Shown here one piece after another: positions 471 to 56,072 of a stretch of 64,000 nt of DNA. Below the pieces are notes generated by a model. It was not told the DNA's origin, searched no databases, and saw nothing but the letters and a program-made list of their open reading frames with translations. The position numbers and the translations under genes were made by a program. The DNA is taken from assembly GCF_006345805.1 (NCBI RefSeq), contig NW_021831989.1, positions 1 to 64,000 of the forward strand, in the 5' to 3' direction. This DNA comes from Octopus sinensis (Eukaryota). How positions within the stretch are numbered: the stretch's first letter is position 1; each line of letters begins with the position of its first letter.

Positions 471-974
471 GTGATGGACAGGTGGAACGTGCATCTACAT
501 TACAACAAATGCGATATAGGCGAGGTGAAACTAGAGAGGGGCATATTACAGGGCGACAGCATGTCTCCGCTGCTGTTCGTCCTCTGCCTAGAACCGCTGA
601 GTAGAATCCACACTGCCCAATTCGAACAAATGTCGATCGAACATGAAGGAGGGTGTTTTAACACCAACCATCTCATGTTCATAGACGACATTAAGCTGTT
701 CGCTCGGTCTTCAGAGATCCTCCACTCAATGGGTAAAGTCCTGAAAGGTTTCATGAAGGCCGTGGGGTTGGAGCTCAACTACAACAAGTCGGCGACTAAC
801 ACCCCTGTGTGTGGTGACCTAGTCAAAGTCTTGGAGGAACACCAAGGAAATCTTAAGAGGACTCTGGAGAGTGTCTCGTTTGATGCTCGCCGATCCAGCC
901 CTTTCCTGACGTTTAGTCAGCAAGAGGCGCTGGACTGCACTTTCTTCTGCTCACTTCGAAGGCTCTGGACTTAG
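471..974 (+). mobile_element. R4/Dong-like (REL) non-LTR retrotransposon fragment: RT core joined to the end of the endonuclease
   Basis: RT motifs RGILQGDSMSPLLF and LMFIDDIKL, followed directly by LKRTLESV, which is the REL C-terminus seen at 56360 and 61650. Confidence 0.85.
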
Positions 975-17961: not shown

Positions 17962-18234
17962 CTAACTTTATTTTTTCGAAGTTAATTTATGGAATTAATT
18001 AAGAAAATTTAACCGGTCCGAAGTGAACCCCGCCAACATAATTGACGTTGCGTTGCCTCTCACGATAGCAACGGAGATCAACTGGAGAAGCCACCGGGTC
18101 TCACGTGTGTCGTGGCTTTTTAATGTGGCTAAGCGTCCAAGCTTCTTTAGGAAGCGAAGCGATTTCCCACTTATTCCTCCAGTTGTCTCGACCACAATCG
18201 GACAGAACACGAATCGATCTCGCAGCGCTTCATA
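17962..18234 (-). mobile_element. CRE-like 3' end
   Basis: KYEAL..FCPIVVETTGG...WLLQLISVAIVRGN; possible TSD ttttggcaaat at 17951-17961 and 18235-18245. Confidence 0.82.
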
Positions 18235-18779
18235 TTTTGGCAAATTATAAAGAAAATATATATTTTTATAAAATTGTTTCAGAATCAAAAAATAAGATTT
18301 TTTATATCCTAGTCGTTTTACTCCCCAGATTTATATTTGATTTAAAAATATGGTTTTCGAGAATTTTTAGTCGTTTTAAATTTTTGTTCAAACATTATAT
18401 TTGGCTTACCTTACTAATAAGTCGGTTTTTGACTTTGCGAATTTGTATTAAATTATTTATATTATAAGGATTTGTACTTTTTGTGGGAATGTACTTACAG
18501 TGTAAGACCATCCTAAACTATTGCGACTTCAACAACTTGGCAAGTCTAATAAACATTATTATTGGCCACTCAAATTTGTCAAAATAGTAATGTTTTCAAA
18601 AGTTTTATCTTTTAATATATAAATCGAGCGTGTTTGTCTTTAATTGAATGATATATTCAAACACTTGTTCTCTCTCTAAACCTAGTACAATATGATCATT
18701 TATTGATATCAATTGATCCCGTTTCTAAGATATCATTAAACAATAATAAACTTTAAGTGTTGTTGAGCCTCCGTATTTG

Positions 18780-21100: not shown

Positions 21101-21422
21101 CTTCTCTGCCGGAATCATCTTTACGTCAGCCGGAGAGCCGGGCTCCGCAGCTAACTTGGCCGAAACGCCCAAAATCAAGAAATACAGTGCATTATCTCAC
21201 CGCCATATCTTTGCCCCGATCGCAGTGGAGACATCAGGAGTCTTCGGTCACAGAACTAAAAAATTCCTTATTAAACTGGGGGACCTGGCAAGCAGAAGGA
21301 GAAGTAATCATCGGGAAAGGACATGGCTTTTCCAACGCATATCAATAGCCATCTTGCGTGGGAATTGCCATTCCATCCTATCCCCTGCTACTAATTAAAT
21401 TCGTGTTCAGTTTTTCAAAAAA
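21101..21422 (+). mobile_element. CRE-like 3' end with A-tail and TSD
   Basis: KKYSAL..FAPIAVETSG..WLFQRISIAILRGN; A-run at 21417-21424; 12-bp TSD aatttgagaatt at 21089-21100 and 21423-21434. Confidence 0.88.
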
Positions 21423-21624: not shown

Positions 21625-23177
21625 TCAAATCTTCCAAATATCTGGCAGAACATCTTTCGTGGAATAAAAATTTTCCAACACGGAGGCAGTGAGTACAGAA
21701 GAATTGGAAAAATATCCGCCGATCTGGAAATTAAAATAGTCCAGAAATGTACCAAAAAAACGTGTTTGTTCAAGTCCATAGTAGTGTTCTTGCTGAGACA
21801 CTTTGATTTGATAGAGAGCCTGCGACTGATGAAGTCTCTGTAGTTACTCACACTCGCCGTCTAATCAGGAATACAAGTAATATCACCCACAATAAAGTAT
21901 GACTCGAAATATGGCGACCACACCAGGAAATCCACACGCTCACTCTCGAACAGTGCCAGATTGGAGGCACAACGACTAACCGCACTACCCTCCTCAGGGC
22001 AAACACAACCAGAATGGGAGAGACACCACATTTTTGTAGAACTGTGCCAATTTGTGGACAACCGTGTTCATAGTCCGACTACAACTCATTTCATCAGTCT
22101 CGGCAAATAAGAAGGGAGACTGGAATGTGAATGATATGGACAACACGACAGGTCTGGATGGCTCCATACAGTCCAGTGTCGGGGGAGGGGACCTGATCAC
22201 ACAAGAACGAAGACCCGTAGGCACACAATCCGAACGGAAGACATTCGGCAGAAATGTTCATTCGAGTCAAGTATGCTGGAATATTACAAGTCAGAAGACC
22301 GAAAAGACTGAATATTGAAACTCCTGGAAATGCCAGTCCTTGGGAGAGAGTGAGAAGAGAAGACGGATTCATCTCGCACACATCCTACACGTGATGACCC
22401 AAACTAACGAAAAGTGCCATTTTCACCATCGATGGGACTGAAATAAAAGTAGGACTACACAGGTCACGCAGGGAGCTCACGACTACTCGACGGACACGTT
22501 TTTCTATTTGGGCTGCATCCCCCGTGAGGAAATAAGTGTGTAGACTCTGGTTGTGAGTGATATAGTTGAAATGACACTTATTTCCTTTGAGATGACAATT
22601 ATCTTTGAAAATGAGTTGATCATGAGTATCCTAATATTATAATAATGGATAACAGGTGTGGTGGAGGAGAGTTTGTTGGGGACTTGTCTCATTATATTAA
22701 TATATTCCATTCGCTGATTGTCCAGTTTGTCCTGCCAATCACAACCAGACAGACCAACCCGGCAAATCCGATGCCTTCTTTTAAGTTCCCTTGCATAGCT
22801 AACTAATTGTTCCTTCTCATTCGGAATGTCGCATGGATTACAGGGAAGCTATGTGATTATACTCACATTTAAACTCTCCCCAGCACTAATTTCTCTATGA
22901 GTTCATTCGTGTTGGTTCGGTCGCTCGTGACTTCCTCGAAAGCCTTAAAGGCCGCTTTATACTTGTTGAATGACTCCATCTAATGCATATAAAACACGTC
23001 CATTACTAATATATCGAAATCGAGGTCCATCTTCCTTAGTTTTATGTTATTTCGGAGGGAAAGCGTGTTATCAAATATGTAGGAATAATCAAATGAAGGT
23101 CGAATTACTGTTCCCGCCTGTTTTTTCAGAATATTGATTGTCGATTTTAATCGGCGGGAAAAATAAACTCGTATCAT
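21625..23177 (-). CDS. Mitochondrial seryl-tRNA synthetase paralogue with degenerate active site (SLIMP-like), about 11 exons
   Basis: Removing ten 23-32-nt GT-AG introns gives one frame: N-terminal coiled arm, VPN, YFLTGDAAQIE, FISVPSMVK, LPF, GLYGAIQT, VWSPYF..SVSNYRDFISRRL and SVLEN..VLP. Confidence 0.75.
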
Positions 23178-23760: not shown

Positions 23761-25415
23761 CGGTCCTGTCTCTTTATTTATTTATTTATTAACTCCAAGA
23801 TCACCGAGAAAGATAGGTCAGAACTAACTAATTAGGTGATCCCTGCCTCCAACCACAGCCGTACTTTCCTTACATGATCTTCTGATGACCCGACCGTAAT
23901 CCGGGATACTGAACGGCACGGACCACGACCAGAACCGTATTCCACCTTCTTCACACCAGATGATGTTGACAAGGCTATTAAATCCCTACGTCCCACCCGT
24001 TCTTGTGGCCCCGACGGGATTTGTGCTATTCACTTCAAACACCTGGGACCCCGGGCACGGACCGTACTATCAAGACTATATAACGACTCCATCAACTTAC
24101 GTACGATACCTAATATATGGAAAAACTCCCTAATTACGCCAATCCTAAAGCCTGGGAAACCAAAGGATGCCCCCTCTTCATACCGCCCAATCTCAATAAC
24201 TTGTATCTTATCGAAAGTACTGGAAAAGCTCGTATTAATGCGAATCTCTCCTGTCCTACAACTGCCAGAATTCCAGCACGGTTTTAGACCAGACCGTTCC
24301 ACAACGACCCACTTGTGTTCTGTCTCCCAGTTTATCACTGAGGGTTTTAACATGGGAACACACCTACGGACGGCCTTAGTATCTATTGATATACAAAAGG
24401 CTTTTGATTCTGTCCCGAGGAAACTCCTAACGCGGAAGATATTTGATTCGAACTTACATCCGAACATCAAACTGTGGTTGGAAAATTTCTTAACTGGCCG
24501 ACGCGGAGGGTCCGTATCGACAATACTACTTCAAGATCAAGACTACTGCCCAATGGTGTCCCACAAGGCTCCCCTTTATCTCCTCTCCTTTTTAACCTAT
24601 TTCTACATGACCTACCCACTACTAATGACCCAGACATAATGTTCTTATCCTATGCGGACGACCTGATTATCGCTGCAAGAGATAAATCTCCTTCTGTGGC
24701 TGTCGCAATAGTCCAGTCACACCTCAACCGTGTATGTGATTGGCTATCTGCAAACATGTTGTGTGTGTCTGCATCCAAATCCCAATTCACCCTCTTTACT
24801 ACTGACAGAAGATTCAAGAATGGGCTGGAACTATTCATTGGAGACAAACCTATTCCCTCTTCGCGTACCCAGAAGATCCTTGGCGTGGTTTTCGAATCCT
24901 TAATGACGTTCTCAAGTCACGTAGAGGAGGCCCTAGCTAAAGGTCTGCGGAAGTGGAACGTCTTGAAAGCTCTGTTAAAGAAGAGTCCCTTCCCCCTGAA
25001 AGATTGTGTCAGCAAAGTCTACCAACAAGTGATTGCCCCGACGGTTGAGTATGCCTGCTCAGCCTGGAGGTTTGCAATTGCTTGTTCGAAAGCGAAACGT
25101 TCGAACTCACTCAGAAGGAAGATTATGCTCCACACTGACACCTCAGTTGGCAGTCTTGCTTCCGAGGAGGCGACGCAGAAGAATGGAGACCTTTAGCTAG
25201 GGCCTCCTCTACGTGACTTGAGAACGTCATTAAGGATTCGAAAACCATTCAAGTGGACAGGGTTTCCTACGTTTCTGCAAGGAACTGGGAAACCCACTCA
25301 AGGAAAAGGTGGCACATGCAGAGGAATTTCGGTCGGTTATAAAGAAATGCACTCCAATTGAGTTCCTCTGCAGAAGGAAGAGAAGGCTTTTCCGGATTAC
25401 GGTCCTGTCTCTTTA
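23761..25415. mobile_element. I/Jockey-like LINE insertion with 5' inversion, TSD and (TAAA)n tail
   Basis: TSD cggtcctgtctcttta at 23761-23776 and 25400-25415; tail and 3' end on the minus strand at 23777-23904; RT on the plus strand at 23905-25400 (GPDGI, YRPISI, QHGFRP, DIQKAFDSV, GVPQGSPLSP, YADDL). Confidence 0.92.
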
Positions 25416-26305: not shown

Positions 26306-27039
26306 TCATCTCAGAGATTTAAAGAATCCAGACTTGTTTCTTGACGAATGTACAGTGGGCGACCCTCCCGAAAGTCGTTTTCTCTCCTTTTGAGATATTC
26401 CAGTTTGTTGAGAGAACTTGAAGGCAATGTCCTTCTTTACTCGACGGTGAGAGAAGAAGGACAATTGAACGGCCACATCAAACAAAACTTTAATGTTATT
26501 CTGGGTCAGAGCTGAGCACTCTACGTATGAACGGGCTCCGATTTGTTTGGCCAACTCACGACCCTCCTTTTCCGAAATTGTATCTCCCTTTCCTCCCGAG
26601 AGGAGGTCACAATGAGTCCCAACAAGTACAATTGGAATAGTCCGAGAACCAAGTCGGGGACTCCAACAGGACTTGATTTTTTCAAAACTATCTCGATTGA
26701 GCAAGTCGAAGCACAAAAGTATTACATCACACAACTGGATTGTGCTGGAGTGGAAATGCATGCTATCAGGCTACAACTAAATAAGCACATTTACGTTGCC
26801 CGACGTGTCGTAAATCTCCAGCTTCAGCTTATCTCCGAAATACTCAACACACACTGAAATCGAATTTAATCACTACTTGAATAAGTGTCTAGAGAAGTAG
26901 GATTATAATTTTTGTGGAAGTAATGTTTGGCATAGCTCAAAATGAGACAAGTTTTACCGACTCGACTTTCGCCAAACAGTCCAATTCTTACAAAAGGAAT
27001 GTTTCCTGATTGTTCATTGCCTGATTGACCATTCTTCAT
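26306..27039 (-). CDS. Atypical Rho-family GTPase
   Basis: G1 GESRVGKT, G3 DTSGN, G4 VGTHCDL, G5 YVECSAL; introns of 23 and 24 nt. Confidence 0.85.
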
Positions 27040-30872: not shown

Positions 30873-32076
<1,204 letters not shown>

Positions 32077-47206: not shown

Positions 47207-48142
47207 TCATGCATTGCTGGCTGTGCTTTGGTGACGGACAAGCTTAGTCCACTGATATGTCAGATCGTTGTGGAAATTCATATTCCTGAATAAAATACGG
47301 AATAGTTGTCGGAGATAAAAGTAGTCGGGGGCCTCGTCAAATCGAAGAGAACGACAGTAATTGAGATAAATCACAAATTCGTTGGGAAACCCCCGACAGA
47401 GTGACTCCACTGCCGTCGATATCTTCTTCTCTGATATCCTCTCATACTTCTGTCGCCGATTCCCAGCTCTGAGGCCTTGCCAAGGCAGGTTTCCTCTGTT
47501 GAGGTACATGAGGACGTACCCTAGGGACTCCAAATCATCCCTCCGACTCTGTTCCACCCCCAAATGAGCATTAATACTGGCATATCGAGCAGTCCCCGTC
47601 AGACTCTTGTTCTCTCTGTAGGGAATGTGGACACCCGTGGACACACTCATATACTTCTTGGCCAGACCAAAGTCGATTATGAACACTTTGTTCGAATACT
47701 TCCCCAAACCCATCAAAAAGTTGTCGGGTTTTATGTCCCTGTGAATAAAACAACGGGAATGGACAAATTGAAGTCTCTCCAACATTTGGTCAGCCAACAT
47801 CAACACACTTTTCAGTTCGAGTCTTCGATTACAGACATTAAATAATTCTTCTATTGACTGTCCCAGCAGTTCCATCACCATTATATTGTATCCGTTATGC
47901 TGGAAATATCCGCTTATTGACGGGATTCCGTGGTCTTTTTGGAGGTGTTGATAAACTTTACTCTCATATGCCAATTGCGTGTGCTCAGAACGAGAATTCT
48001 CGACTTTTACGGCCACTTCTTCGCCGTTAATAATACTCACTGCCGAATATATTTTTCCGAATGACCCACTTCCAATTTGACGGATCAGTCGGTAATAGTT
48101 TCCAACTACCACGTTTGCTAGGTTGTCTTCAATTTCTGACAT
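47207..48142 (-). CDS. CSNK1A1: Casein kinase I alpha, single exon
   Basis: 311-aa ORF with [36 protein letters not shown] and SRRDDLES. Confidence 0.95.
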
Positions 48143-54504: not shown

Positions 54505-56072
54505 ATGAACGATGAAAACAACTTTATGAAGACTCAAGATACACTAAATGAAGAGATGGTTTATTTATACAAATCAAATCCTTTTAGTCAGACAAGGGAG
54601 TCGTTTCTGATGTTGTAAATGATGTCGCAAATACCTTCAATTATGACCCTACTATTGCGATCGAAGGTTAAAACACAAGATACCTATTTTAAGGATTCAA
54701 TGACCCTTATGAGGACGTTGTGCCAATGGAAATGGAGTACTTCTTTGATGACTTTAAGAAAGACATTATAATCTTTTCCGAAGATTGGAAAGAATGCGCA
54801 TTCAATCTGTCCTTTTCGAGACATGCCAATTCGAGAATCTAAAGGACAGAATGCACGATATGTGGGATTCACTAGTCTTCAAAATAATTATTCGCCCCGG
54901 AAACGGAATGTCCACCCCAGGAGACTTTTTTGTAGCCAAAAGTCTATTTTATATTCTCAGATTTAGTAAAATATGAGGCATATTTGATGGGATTCCCGCT
55001 ACCTTACGACTCCAAGATCAGACGAGTCCGCCTCGGCAAGAGTTGATTGCTTTTGTAATTTGATTAGACTCAATGGGGCCCGGACTCGAATTGGGAATCA
55101 AGTCGATGGTCCGCGGGGAAGTTTCCGCGTTTTTACTTCACATAGACGTGGCATATGGTGACTACGAAATGTTCTCAGTGCTCCCTCCCAACTCTTATCG
55201 TTATGTTTGTTGTCTATTTTTAGTTTTATTTATAGTAGAAGTTTTGCAGTTTTATCCTGGAACTCCTGCGGATTCATATTACGAGCATCCATACGTATTT
55301 GGGGTTGTTGATTTGTAGAATGTTCGAAGGTATCTGCCATTTGCAGAGATCCAAGAAGTGATCCATCAGGAGAAAGCCGTAAGTTATTCAAATTTACATT
55401 TAGGAAGGCAATAAATGTTTCTCTCATGGAAAATTCTGGAAAGCTTATAGTCACTACGAGCGGGTTGACATTTTTGTTTATTCCAAGTCTCTCAGAGTGC
55501 TTTCAGAACGGCCCTTTCAAACCTTTTACGAGGAAGTACACTTGAAGAGGGTAAAGCAGGAATTGTTATGTAATTCTGCCTTGTGTTATTTCCGTCTGGA
55601 AGAGTACGAAAGTTGTCTCAATTGCTGCAAGATATGTCTTAAAATTGACGATAATTGCATCAAAGCTATGTACCGTTGTGGGAAAGCGTATTTGGCAATG
55701 GGGAAAAGAGAAAAGGGCATTAAATACTTGAAGAAATCTCTCAAATTGGAGCCCTACAACACTCAAATAGGGCGTGACCTTATTATTCTGGAGAAGGAGG
55801 CGCAAGTCAGAAAAGCGGAGGAGCGTGATTATTACAGGAAGGCGTTTGGACGGCATAAATTGGTCAAGAAAACTGAGGAAGATCAGAGTGATAGACAAGT
55901 TGATTCGGATTTTAAAGATTCGGTGTATGAGCTGTTGAATCAGCTCATTAAGCAAAGTGATTGTGATGATGTCGTTTTCTCTGATGTTTTTTCGCCCGCA
56001 GAACGCAATTTTATCGATAAAACGGCCGTGAAAATGAATTTCAAAACACAGAAGGTTTTTAATGGTGATTAA
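54505..56072 (+). CDS. FKBP6: FKBP6/Shutdown-like FKBP-TPR co-chaperone, multi-exon
   Basis: FENLKDRMHDM..VFKIIIRPGNG, VKYEAYL..PYDS, GLELGIKSM.RGE and LPPNS; TPR CNSALCY..KAMYRCGKA..EPYN; ERDYYRKAFG. Confidence 0.78.

What the first reader, a model, noticed from the sequence alone, without database searches (positions are those of the whole stretch)
21625..23177. Hidden SLIMP-like pseudo-synthetase: a seryl-tRNA synthetase fold with the catalytic motifs lost
Seen: ten tiny GT-AG introns splice scattered short ORFs into one SerRS-shaped protein. The GTAE motif is absent, the motif-2 R-x-E and GLYRVHQF are replaced by AYGSSF..GLYGAIQT, SNCTDxQSRRL becomes SNYRDFISRRL, and the motif-3 Arg position holds Val (NSSVL). 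Known: SLIMP is an aminoacylation-dead SerRS2 paralogue characterised in insects, where it partners SerRS2 and the LON protease. Inference: this is either a SLIMP orthologue in a highly reduced non-arthropod animal or an independently evolved pseudo-SerRS. Its retention in such a stripped-down genome would imply an essential non-catalytic mitochondrial role.
Basis: partly seen in the sequence, partly recalled or inferred. Interest (0 to 1): 0.8.

Follow-up and report, generated by a model that had tools for sequence, protein, structure and literature searches.

The report
SLIMP orthologue in a dicyemid parasite
This is a real, intact gene for SLIMP, the catalytically dead partner subunit of the animal mitochondrial seryl-tRNA synthetase; SLIMP is already known to be widespread in invertebrates, so this is an expected new member, found in what looks like a dicyemid parasite contig inside an octopus genome assembly.

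Summary
On the minus strand, 23177..21625, eleven exons joined by ten GT-AG introns of 22-30 bp give a 431-aa protein. Eight introns are obligatory; two in-frame ones are supported by homology. The protein is SerRS-shaped, but every catalytic residue checked is replaced: the TxE, the motif-2 RxE, the R/H/F of GLYRVHQF and the motif-3 Arg.

It is not an independent invention. It scores 128.5 bits on a SLIMP profile against 49-54 bits on SerRS2/SerRS2alpha profiles. It falls inside the SLIMP clade in 299 of 300 NJ bootstraps. It shares SLIMP-derived residues and lacks the C-tail, as SLIMPs do. Randomly degraded SerRS2 sequences never mimic this.

SLIMP is not insect-only. De Potter et al. 2023 showed it in molluscs, annelids, tardigrades and echinoderms, as the tRNA-binding, non-catalytic subunit of a SLIMP/SerRS2alpha heterodimer.

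The window is the start of a contig in the Octopus sinensis assembly, but its tiny introns point to a dicyemid kidney parasite.

Verdict: a new member of a known kind, of modest interest. Still untested: the splice junctions by RNA-seq, the presence of a SerRS2alpha partner, and a dicyemid mt-tRNASer.

The parts
21625..23177 (-). Whole SLIMP-like gene, from start ATG (23177) to stop TGA (21627-21625): 11 exons, 10 introns, 1296-nt CDS, 431 aa
   Evidence: Model built. SLIMP HMM 128.5 bits over aa 99-426.
23007..23177 (-). Exon 1 (aa 1-57). It is followed by intron 1, 23006-22980 (27 bp, ends in an in-frame TAG, obligatory). The first 29 aa have 7 K/R and no D/E, which looks like a mitochondrial presequence.
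   Evidence: Alternative intron-1 boundaries cannot be told apart, because this region lies outside the profile.
22875..22979 (-). Exon 2 (aa 58-92), the ascending helix of the N-terminal arm. It is followed by intron 2, 22874-22849 (26 bp, frameshifting, obligatory).
   Evidence: a 38-bp alternative, 22886-22849, scores 2 bits higher; Pfam Seryl_tRNA_N aa 30-141.
22759..22848 (-). Exon 3 (aa 93-122). It holds ARELKRRHR; K115 aligns with DmSLIMP R123 / human SerRS2 R146. It is followed by intron 3, 22758-22732 (27 bp, in frame, optional).
   Evidence: (removing the intron adds 9.5 bits).
22654..22731 (-). Exon 4 (aa 123-148), the descending helix ending in the conserved (L/V)PN motif (QVPNKL, aa 138-143). 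It is followed by intron 4, 22653-22631 (23 bp, obligatory).
   Evidence: (P140 invariant).
22409..22630 (-). Exon 5 (aa 149-222), the start of the class II core (YFLTGDAAQIE, aa 181-191). It is followed by intron 5, 22408-22385 (24 bp, contains an in-frame TAG, obligatory).
   Evidence: an 18-bp alternative, 22390-22373, scores within 0.4 bits.
22300..22384 (-). Exon 6 (aa 223-251). It holds PGVSI at the G-T-A-E position (T->V244, E->I246). It is followed by intron 6, 22299-22276 (24 bp, in frame, optional).
   Evidence: removing the intron adds 6.6 bits. The spliced GVSIFSLFAYLTRMNI resembles Octopus SLIMP GVSPMSFAAFWTRMTV.
22121..22275 (-). Exon 7 (aa 251-302), the degenerate motif 2: LPFGLCAYGSSFLCD (R->L275, E->D277) and GLYGAIQT (R->G288, H->I290, F->T292). 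It is followed by intron 7, 22120-22099 (22 bp, obligatory).
   Evidence: The overlapping alternative intron 22141-22120 gives SPFLFAE instead of VHIIHIP and scores 3.9 bits higher.
22010..22098 (-). Exon 8 (aa 303-332). It is followed by intron 8, 22009-21985 (25 bp, obligatory).
   Evidence: the chosen boundaries score best.
21891..21984 (-). Exon 9 (aa 332-363). It holds LALFESERVDFLVWSP, with the SLIMP-derived E345 and R348 where SerRS2 has A and K. It is followed by intron 9, 21890-21861 (30 bp, ends in an in-frame TAG, obligatory).
   Evidence: Best tblastn hit is Capitella SLIMP, 45% identity over 51 aa, E=8e-7.
21753..21860 (-). Exon 10 (aa 364-399). It holds SNYRDFISRRL, with SLIMP-derived I374 where all catalytic SerRS have Q. 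It is followed by intron 10, 21752-21724 (29 bp, obligatory).
21625..21723 (-). Exon 11 (aa 400-431 plus stop), the degenerate motif 3: IGGYFSNSSVL (N->G401, R->V409). Only 5 residues follow the conserved Pro426, so there is no C-tail.

Best explanation
The gene encodes the orthologue of SLIMP in a dicyemid mesozoan, probably a Dicyema species living in Octopus sinensis. SLIMP is the paralogue of mitochondrial seryl-tRNA synthetase that arose at the base of Bilateria and lost its active site.

Shown here:
- The spliced 431-aa product belongs to the SLIMP clade.
- It has lost the serine-, ATP- and adenylate-binding residues.
- It keeps an N-terminal arm homologous to the SerRS tRNA-binding coiled coil.
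- It lacks the C-tail.
- It starts with a basic, acid-free presequence-like stretch.

Inferred from Drosophila work and comparative modelling (PMC10570016):
- The protein is imported into mitochondria.
- It pairs with a separately encoded SerRS2alpha, which keeps the active site but has lost the coiled coil.
- It supplies the arm that holds mt-tRNASer while SerRS2alpha charges the tRNA across the dimer interface. The enzyme then has one active site made from two half-functional subunits.

Its retention in a very reduced genome follows from that role. Without it, the heterodimer cannot aminoacylate.
For: - Gene model: 8 obligatory and 2 homology-supported GT-AG introns of 22-30 bp.
- Profile test: HMMs were built from the published SLIMP/SerRS2alpha/SerRS2 alignment. 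The window protein scores 128.5 bits on SLIMP, 53.8 on SerRS2alpha, 28.9 on SerRS2 and 49.3 on the pooled SerRS2alpha+SerRS2 profile.
- Catalytic half alone: 111.1 against 50.6 bits. N-terminal half: 18.7 bits on SLIMP against about 0 on the others.
- Leave-one-out controls sort all 14 SLIMPs and all 19 catalytic enzymes correctly.
- Conserved columns: of 83 columns at least 80% conserved in catalytic SerRS, the window keeps 29. SLIMPs keep 21-46; the nematode and tardigrade enzymes scored (C. elegans, Trichinella and Ramazzottius) keep 75-76. All catalytic positions are replaced.
- Shared derived states: the window shares 5 of the 8 most diagnostic SLIMP-derived residues (G271, V334, E345, R348, I374).
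- NJ tree: inside the SLIMP clade in 299/300 bootstraps, next to annelid and mollusc SLIMP.
- Null model: 2,280 randomly degraded SerRS2 sequences never exceed +6 bits for SLIMP minus SerRS2. The window gives +79.
- C-tail: 5 residues after the conserved Pro. SLIMPs have 0-15; SerRS2/2alpha have 17-26.
- Function and distribution of SLIMP: PMC10570016.
- Source organism: contig VCDQ01006019.1 of the O. sinensis assembly; intron sizes typical of dicyemids; actin in the window also has tiny introns.
Against: - No transcript evidence: the junctions rest on reading frame and homology, and a few are ambiguous.
- The reference sequences were retyped from a machine-read supplementary figure. It lacks the N-terminal ~80-130 residues and may hold errors.
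- The tree is NJ on corrected p-distances, with long branches. Placement within the SLIMPs is weak: subgroup HMMs give spiralian 88.8 and chelicerate 85.2 bits.
- The conserved arm Arg (DmSLIMP R123) is Lys here. Lottia SLIMP also has Lys.
- No SerRS2alpha partner could be looked for beyond this 64-kb window; there is none in it.
- Only one mt tRNA (trnV) has been found in Dicyema, and no tRNASer is on record.
- The dicyemid origin is inferred, not shown by a match to a Dicyema sequence.
Confidence: 0.8

Rival explanations
1. An independently degenerated SerRS2 paralogue that only resembles SLIMP by convergence or long-branch attraction.
For: Dicyemid proteins evolve very fast. The protein is the most divergent of the set: 128 bits against 170-338 bits for known SLIMPs in leave-one-out. 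Pairwise BLAST interleaves SLIMP and SerRS2alpha hits. NJ is prone to long-branch attraction.
Against: It shares specific SLIMP-derived residues at columns where catalytic enzymes are invariant, such as Q->I374, A->E345 and S->G271. It sits among protostome SLIMPs, not at the base of the clade. Random degradation of SerRS2 to the same SerRS2-profile score gives about 2 bits on the SLIMP profile, not 128. It shows the same C-tail loss and arm retention as SLIMP.
Confidence: 0.05
2. A SLIMP-derived pseudogene, or a gene no longer used, in a genome that is shedding functions.
For: There are no expression data. Scores against general libraries are very low. Retroelement debris lies on both sides. 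No mt-tRNASer is known in Dicyema.
Against: An open frame of 431 codons is kept across 11 exons. It needs eight exact GT-AG excisions, and no in-frame stop or frameshift is left over. Conservation is spread over the whole length and is strongest at structural and dimer-core segments. A presequence-like N-terminus is kept.
Confidence: 0.06
3. A true SLIMP orthologue that works without the usual partner. It might act, for example, through the LON protease in the upkeep of the dicyemid mitochondrial minicircles, with serylation done by another enzyme.
For: In Drosophila the heterodimer also binds LON and affects mtDNA levels. Dicyemid mtDNA is unusual and its tRNA set is unknown. Nematode SerRS2 shows that the system can take other paths.
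Against: Nothing in the sequence points to a new surface or domain. The tRNA-binding arm, with its basic patch (K115, R116, R117), is kept, and that arm is what aminoacylation needs.
Confidence: 0.07
4. A highly divergent but still active mitochondrial seryl-tRNA synthetase.
For: The overall fold homology to SerRS runs from the N-terminal arm to motif 3.
Against: T and E of the TxE, R and E of motif 2, R/H/F of GLYRVHQF, the following E, and the motif-3 N and R are all replaced. These positions are 100% conserved in all 22 catalytic sequences compared, including fast-evolving nematode enzymes.
Confidence: 0.01

Closest known systems
[quoted passage not shown]
   Same: It shares the same clade, the collapsed active site and the retained N-terminal arm ending in (L/V)PN. 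It shares the derived D-F-I-S-R-R-L (Q->I) and L-x-x-x-E-S-x-R segments, and G-V-S at the GTAE position as in Octopus SLIMP. It has no C-tail and has a presequence-like start.
   Different: It is the most divergent member seen: 18-26% identity to the others, and 128 bits against 170-338 bits for known members. It has Lys instead of Arg at the DmSLIMP R123 position, as in Lottia. It comes from a phylum (Dicyemida) that the 2023 survey does not mention in its text. The gene is split by ten 22-30 bp introns.
Mitochondrial seryl-tRNA synthetase SerRS2 / SerRS2alpha (human SARS2, PDB 7U2A/7TZB; bovine 1WLE)
   Same: It is homologous over the whole length, with the same class II core and arm. A SLIMP profile that includes the window protein matches human SerRS2 at E=7e-62.
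   Different: All catalytic residues are lost. It keeps only 29 of the 83 columns conserved in catalytic enzymes. It lacks the C-tail of ~17-26 residues. Unlike SerRS2alpha, it keeps the arm.
Other catalytically dead synthetase paralogues that serve as subunits, for example HisZ with HisG (from general knowledge, not tested here)
   Same: A duplicated aaRS core keeps its fold and its partner or ligand-binding surface, but gives up catalysis and becomes an obligate subunit.
   Different: The family, the partner and the pathway are different. HisZ regulates histidine biosynthesis and does not take part in tRNA charging.

Membership tests
SLIMP | Sequence falls in the monophyletic SLIMP clade, apart from SerRS2/SerRS2alpha | tested here: met
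   SLIMP HMM 128.5 bits against 49-54 bits. Leave-one-out controls are clean. NJ 299/300 bootstraps. Null model maximum +6 against +79 observed. Caveat: the reference sequences were machine-read from a figure, and the tree is NJ only.
SLIMP | Collapse of the catalytic pocket (loss of the conserved seryl-adenylate and acceptor-end contacts) | tested here: met
   V244/I246 replace T/E. L275/D277 replace R/E. G288/I290/T292 replace R/H/F. V296 replaces E. G401 replaces N. V409 replaces the motif-3 R. 29 of 83 conserved columns are kept, within the SLIMP range of 21-46.
SLIMP | N-terminal coiled-coil tRNA-binding arm retained, with the conserved Arg (DmSLIMP R123 / human R146) | tested here: inconclusive
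   The arm is present at sequence level: Pfam Seryl_tRNA_N aa 30-141 covers 3-106 of 108 profile positions, but at E=1.4e-3, below the cut-off. The SLIMP N-terminal HMM gives 18.7 bits against ~0 for the others.
SLIMP | Loss of the mitochondrial SerRS C-tail | tested here: met
   5 residues after the conserved Pro426. SLIMPs have 0-15; SerRS2/2alpha have 17-26.
SLIMP | Co-occurs with a SerRS2alpha that keeps the active site and has lost the coiled coil | not testable with these tools
   There is no second SerRS-like gene in the 64-kb window. The rest of the genome could not be searched.
SLIMP | Mitochondrial location; obligate heterodimer needed for mt-tRNASer charging; LON binding | not testable with these tools
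   The only hint is that the first 29 aa have 7 K/R and no D/E. The biochemistry is known for Drosophila only.
Canonical seryl-tRNA synthetase (class II aaRS) | Motif 2 fRxE with the GLYRVHQF loop, the TxE serine site and the motif-3 Arg are intact | tested here: not met
   All are replaced. Pfam tRNA-synt_2b scores only 23.5 bits, below the 29.3 cut-off, and matches only aa 306-401.

The most novel reading that the evidence does not exclude
Dicyemids keep SLIMP although the alignment of the 2023 survey has no SLIMP row for the flatworm (Schistosoma) or the orthonectid (Intoshia); for them only a SerRS2 row was seen, in the single block that shows them. In dicyemids SLIMP might work without a conventional SerRS2alpha or mt-tRNASer, for example in LON-linked upkeep of the mitochondrial minicircles.
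Probability: 0.07. Interest if true: 0.6.

Novelty: new member of a known kind. Interest (0 to 1): 0.25.

Why it matters
The finding extends the SLIMP/SerRS2alpha heterodimer to one of the most reduced animal genomes. That fits the published view that this split enzyme is the standard mitochondrial SerRS of protostomes, and that the dead subunit is indispensable.

It gives a handle on dicyemid mitochondrial translation, whose tRNA set is almost unknown. A kept tRNA-binding subunit predicts that a mt-tRNASer and a SerRS2alpha exist.

As a side result, it flags a 670-kb contig of probable parasite origin in a widely used octopus reference assembly. This matters for annotation and for comparative work on cephalopods.

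Tried and rejected
- Word-indexed search of 5.8 billion proteins with the spliced protein found nothing at E<=0.01.
- The same search with a SLIMP profile returned only the Ramazzottius SLIMP and three bacterial SerRS. The collection is poor in animal proteins, so real SLIMP sequences could not be fetched. I used the published alignment instead.
I did not try to get round this.
- The exhaustive library, searched with the exact exon ORF 22097-22381(-), gave only two tandem-repeat proteins, which are spurious.
- The first tree attempt, with Biopython distances, timed out. It was redone with numpy.
- I looked for a solved SLIMP structure. There is none; the best PDB matches are human and bovine SerRS2.
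- I looked for a second SerRS gene in the window. There is none.
- I considered an octopus origin and rejected it. The protein is 21% identical to Octopus bimaculoides SLIMP, and 22-30 bp introns have been reported in animals only from dicyemids and myxobolid myxozoans.
- I considered a myxozoan origin and rejected it. SLIMP arose in Bilateria, and the protein sits among protostome SLIMPs.

Full report
**What is there.** The finding lies on the minus strand. Reading from the ATG at 23177, the frame is broken every 80-220 bases. Each break can be bridged by a GT...AG segment of 22-30 bp.

The resulting model has 11 exons: 23177-23007, 22979-22875, 22848-22759, 22731-22654, 22630-22409, 22384-22300, 22275-22121, 22098-22010, 21984-21891, 21860-21753 and 21723-21625. 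It has 10 introns of 27, 26, 27, 23, 24, 24, 22, 25, 30 and 29 bp, and ends at the TGA at 21627-21625. The product is 431 aa.

Retaining any one of eight introns truncates or frameshifts the product. Introns 3 and 6 are in frame and stop-free, but removing them improves the fit to the SLIMP profile by 9.5 and 6.6 bits.

I tested every alternative GT-AG pair within 40 nt of each junction. The chosen boundaries are best or near-best. Intron 7 has an overlapping 22-bp alternative (22141-22120) that scores 3.9 bits better and changes seven residues. Introns 1, 2, 5 and 10 have alternatives within about 2 bits. Only transcript data can settle these, and none affects what follows.

**Is it SerRS-like, and are the motifs gone?** General libraries barely see the protein. 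Pfam gives tRNA-synt_2b 23.5 bits and Seryl_tRNA_N 19.2 bits, both under their cut-offs. The best PDB chain is a SerRS at E=2e-4, aligned over the last third only. A word-indexed search of 5.8 billion proteins finds nothing.

I aligned the protein with 14 SLIMPs, 13 SerRS2alpha, 6 SerRS2 and 3 bacterial SerRS. In that alignment, 83 columns are at least 80% conserved among the catalytic enzymes.
- The window protein keeps 29 of them.
- Known SLIMPs keep 21-46.
- The fast-evolving nematode and tardigrade enzymes keep 75-76.

Every catalytic position is replaced:
- TxE becomes V244 and I246.
- Motif-2 RxE becomes L275 and D277.
- The R, H and F of GLYRVHQF become G288, I290 and T292.
- The following E becomes V296.
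- The motif-3 N and R become G401 and V409.

**What is already known.** De Potter et al. 2023 (PMC10570016) report the following:
- SLIMP arose from a SerRS2 duplication at the root of Bilateria.
- In all these species its catalytic pocket has collapsed.
- Its partner, SerRS2alpha, has lost the coiled-coil arm.
- In Drosophila neither subunit is active alone. The heterodimer charges mt-tRNASer, and the SLIMP arm with its Arg123 is indispensable.

The authors conclude that this heterodimer is probably the working enzyme in all protostomes.

**Orthologue or convergence?** The big protein collection holds almost no animal SLIMPs. A profile search returned only the Ramazzottius one. I therefore retyped the sequences from the paper's Supplementary Figure 2. 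That text was machine-read, lacks the first ~80-130 residues and may contain errors.

| Region of the window protein | SLIMP profile | SerRS2alpha | SerRS2 | Both pooled |
|---|---|---|---|---|
| Whole protein | 128.5 bits (aa 99-426) | 53.8 | 28.9 | 49.3 |
| Catalytic half alone | 111.1 | – | – | 50.6 |
| N-terminal half | 18.7 | 1.9 | -0.2 (vertebrate SerRS2 only) | – |

Further tests point the same way:
- One hundred shuffles of the catalytic half reach at most 3.5 bits.
- In leave-one-out tests all 14 SLIMPs score higher on the SLIMP profile, and all 19 catalytic enzymes score higher on the SerRS2 profile.
- At the 8 columns where SLIMPs share a derived residue and catalytic enzymes are near-invariant, the window protein has the SLIMP state at 5: G271, V334, E345, R348 and I374. 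The last is the Q-to-I change in D-F-Q-S-R-R-L.
- An NJ tree rooted on bacterial SerRS puts it inside the SLIMP clade in 299 of 300 bootstraps, beside Capitella and Lottia SLIMP.
- As a null model for independent decay, I degraded the 19 catalytic sequences at random, with uniform and with BLOSUM-weighted substitutions. I took them to and beyond the window protein's SerRS2-profile score. Among 2,280 such sequences, the SLIMP-minus-SerRS2 difference never exceeded +6 bits. The window protein gives +79.
- It ends 5 residues after the conserved Pro. SLIMPs end 0-15 residues after it; SerRS2 and SerRS2alpha carry a 17-26-residue tail.

Placement within the SLIMPs is not resolved. Subgroup profiles give spiralian 88.8, chelicerate/tardigrade 85.2, insect 66.0, crustacean/louse 44.5 and echinoderm 29.3 bits. 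The best pairwise hit is Limulus SLIMP.

**The arm.** Residues 30-141 match the Pfam SerRS N-terminal domain over nearly its whole length, although below the cut-off. The sequence reads as helix, Pro-rich tip (LPCNPCDIP), then helix, ending in the invariant P140 of QVPNKL.

The position of DmSLIMP R123 / human R146 holds K115, followed by R116 and R117. Lottia SLIMP also has Lys there. I could not predict the structure, because the tool does not accept a spliced product, so this feature stays inconclusive.

The first 29 residues have seven Lys/Arg and no acidic residue. This is compatible with a mitochondrial presequence.

**Where the DNA comes from.** A single-exon kinase ORF of the window (47207-48142) is on record at the same coordinates on VCDQ01006019.1. 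This is a 670,265-bp contig of GCA_006345805.1, the Octopus sinensis assembly. The window is therefore its first 64 kb. Several points argue against an octopus origin:
- The protein is only 21% identical to Octopus bimaculoides SLIMP.
- The gene has ten introns of 22-30 bp.
- The actin gene at 30873-32073 also has two very short introns, the first about 29 bp, and is only 80-89% identical to human beta-actin.
- Among animals, introns under 30 bp are reported only from dicyemids and myxobolid myxozoans.
- The dicyemid median intron is 27 bp, against 57 bp in the orthonectid Intoshia.
- Dicyema japonicum is collected from O. sinensis; dicyemids live in the renal sacs of cephalopods. Its genome has 36.7% GC and 49% repeats with many LINEs. 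This is much like the window.

A myxozoan source is unlikely, because SLIMP is a bilaterian invention. I conclude that the contig most likely comes from a dicyemid. This is an inference, since no Dicyema sequence was available to compare.

**How it most likely works.** By homology with the Drosophila system, the protein enters mitochondria and dimerises through its class II core with a SerRS2alpha encoded elsewhere. It holds the elbow of mt-tRNASer with its arm while SerRS2alpha charges the acceptor end.

What is shown here is family membership, the dead pocket, the kept arm and the lost tail. What is inferred is import, the partner and the tRNA.

Two gaps remain. No SerRS2alpha could be sought outside the window, and there is none in it. 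Only trnV has so far been found in Dicyema mitochondrial contigs.

**Rivals.**
- Independent degeneration is disfavoured by the shared derived residues, the tree and the null model.
- A pseudogene is disfavoured by an intact 431-codon frame that needs eight exact excisions. It cannot be excluded without expression or dN/dS data.
- An active enzyme is excluded for practical purposes.
- A SLIMP that has taken on another job without its partner is possible, but nothing supports it.

**Verdict.** This is an expected, very divergent new member of a family described across invertebrates in 2023. The more unexpected by-product is the probable parasite contig in the octopus assembly.

Noticed in passing
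window 1-64000 (= VCDQ01006019.1:1-64000 of GCA_006345805.1): The window is the start of a 670-kb contig in the Octopus sinensis reference assembly. Its genes, however, carry 22-30 bp introns and fast-evolving proteins, as in dicyemid kidney parasites of that octopus. It is probably parasite DNA assembled with the host. I found no paper reporting this.
   Followed up: partly
window 30873-32073 (+): An actin gene in three exons (30873-30992, 31022-31504, 31519-32073), separated by two very short introns, the first about 29 bp. It is 80-89% identical to human beta-actin, which is low for an animal actin.
   Followed up: partly
window 471-974 (+), 24238-25196 (+), 17995-18288 (-), 21156-21398 (+): Retroelement debris surrounds the gene. 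There are three ORFs with reverse-transcriptase (RVT_1) matches. There are also two 48%-identical ORF tails in opposite orientation, one ending about 230 bp from the 3' end of the SLIMP-like gene; these have no Pfam match.
   Followed up: partly
window 22099-22141 (-): Intron 7 has two overlapping 22-bp GT-AG candidates that share one G (22141-22120 and 22120-22099). Both keep frame and length. They give VHIIHIP or SPFLFAE just after the degenerate motif 2.
   Followed up: partly
window 47207-48142 (-), 55497-56072 (+), 26306-26761 (-): Other coding ORFs: an uninterrupted 311-aa protein-kinase ORF, a TPR-repeat ORF and a Ras-family GTPase fragment.
   Followed up: no
literature, not the window: In the one block of the supplementary alignment of PMC10570016 where they appear, Schistosoma mansoni and Intoshia linei are labelled 'SerRS2', and no SLIMP row for them was seen in any block. 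If they truly lack SLIMP, its retention in a dicyemid bears on where it was lost among parasitic spiralians.
   Followed up: no
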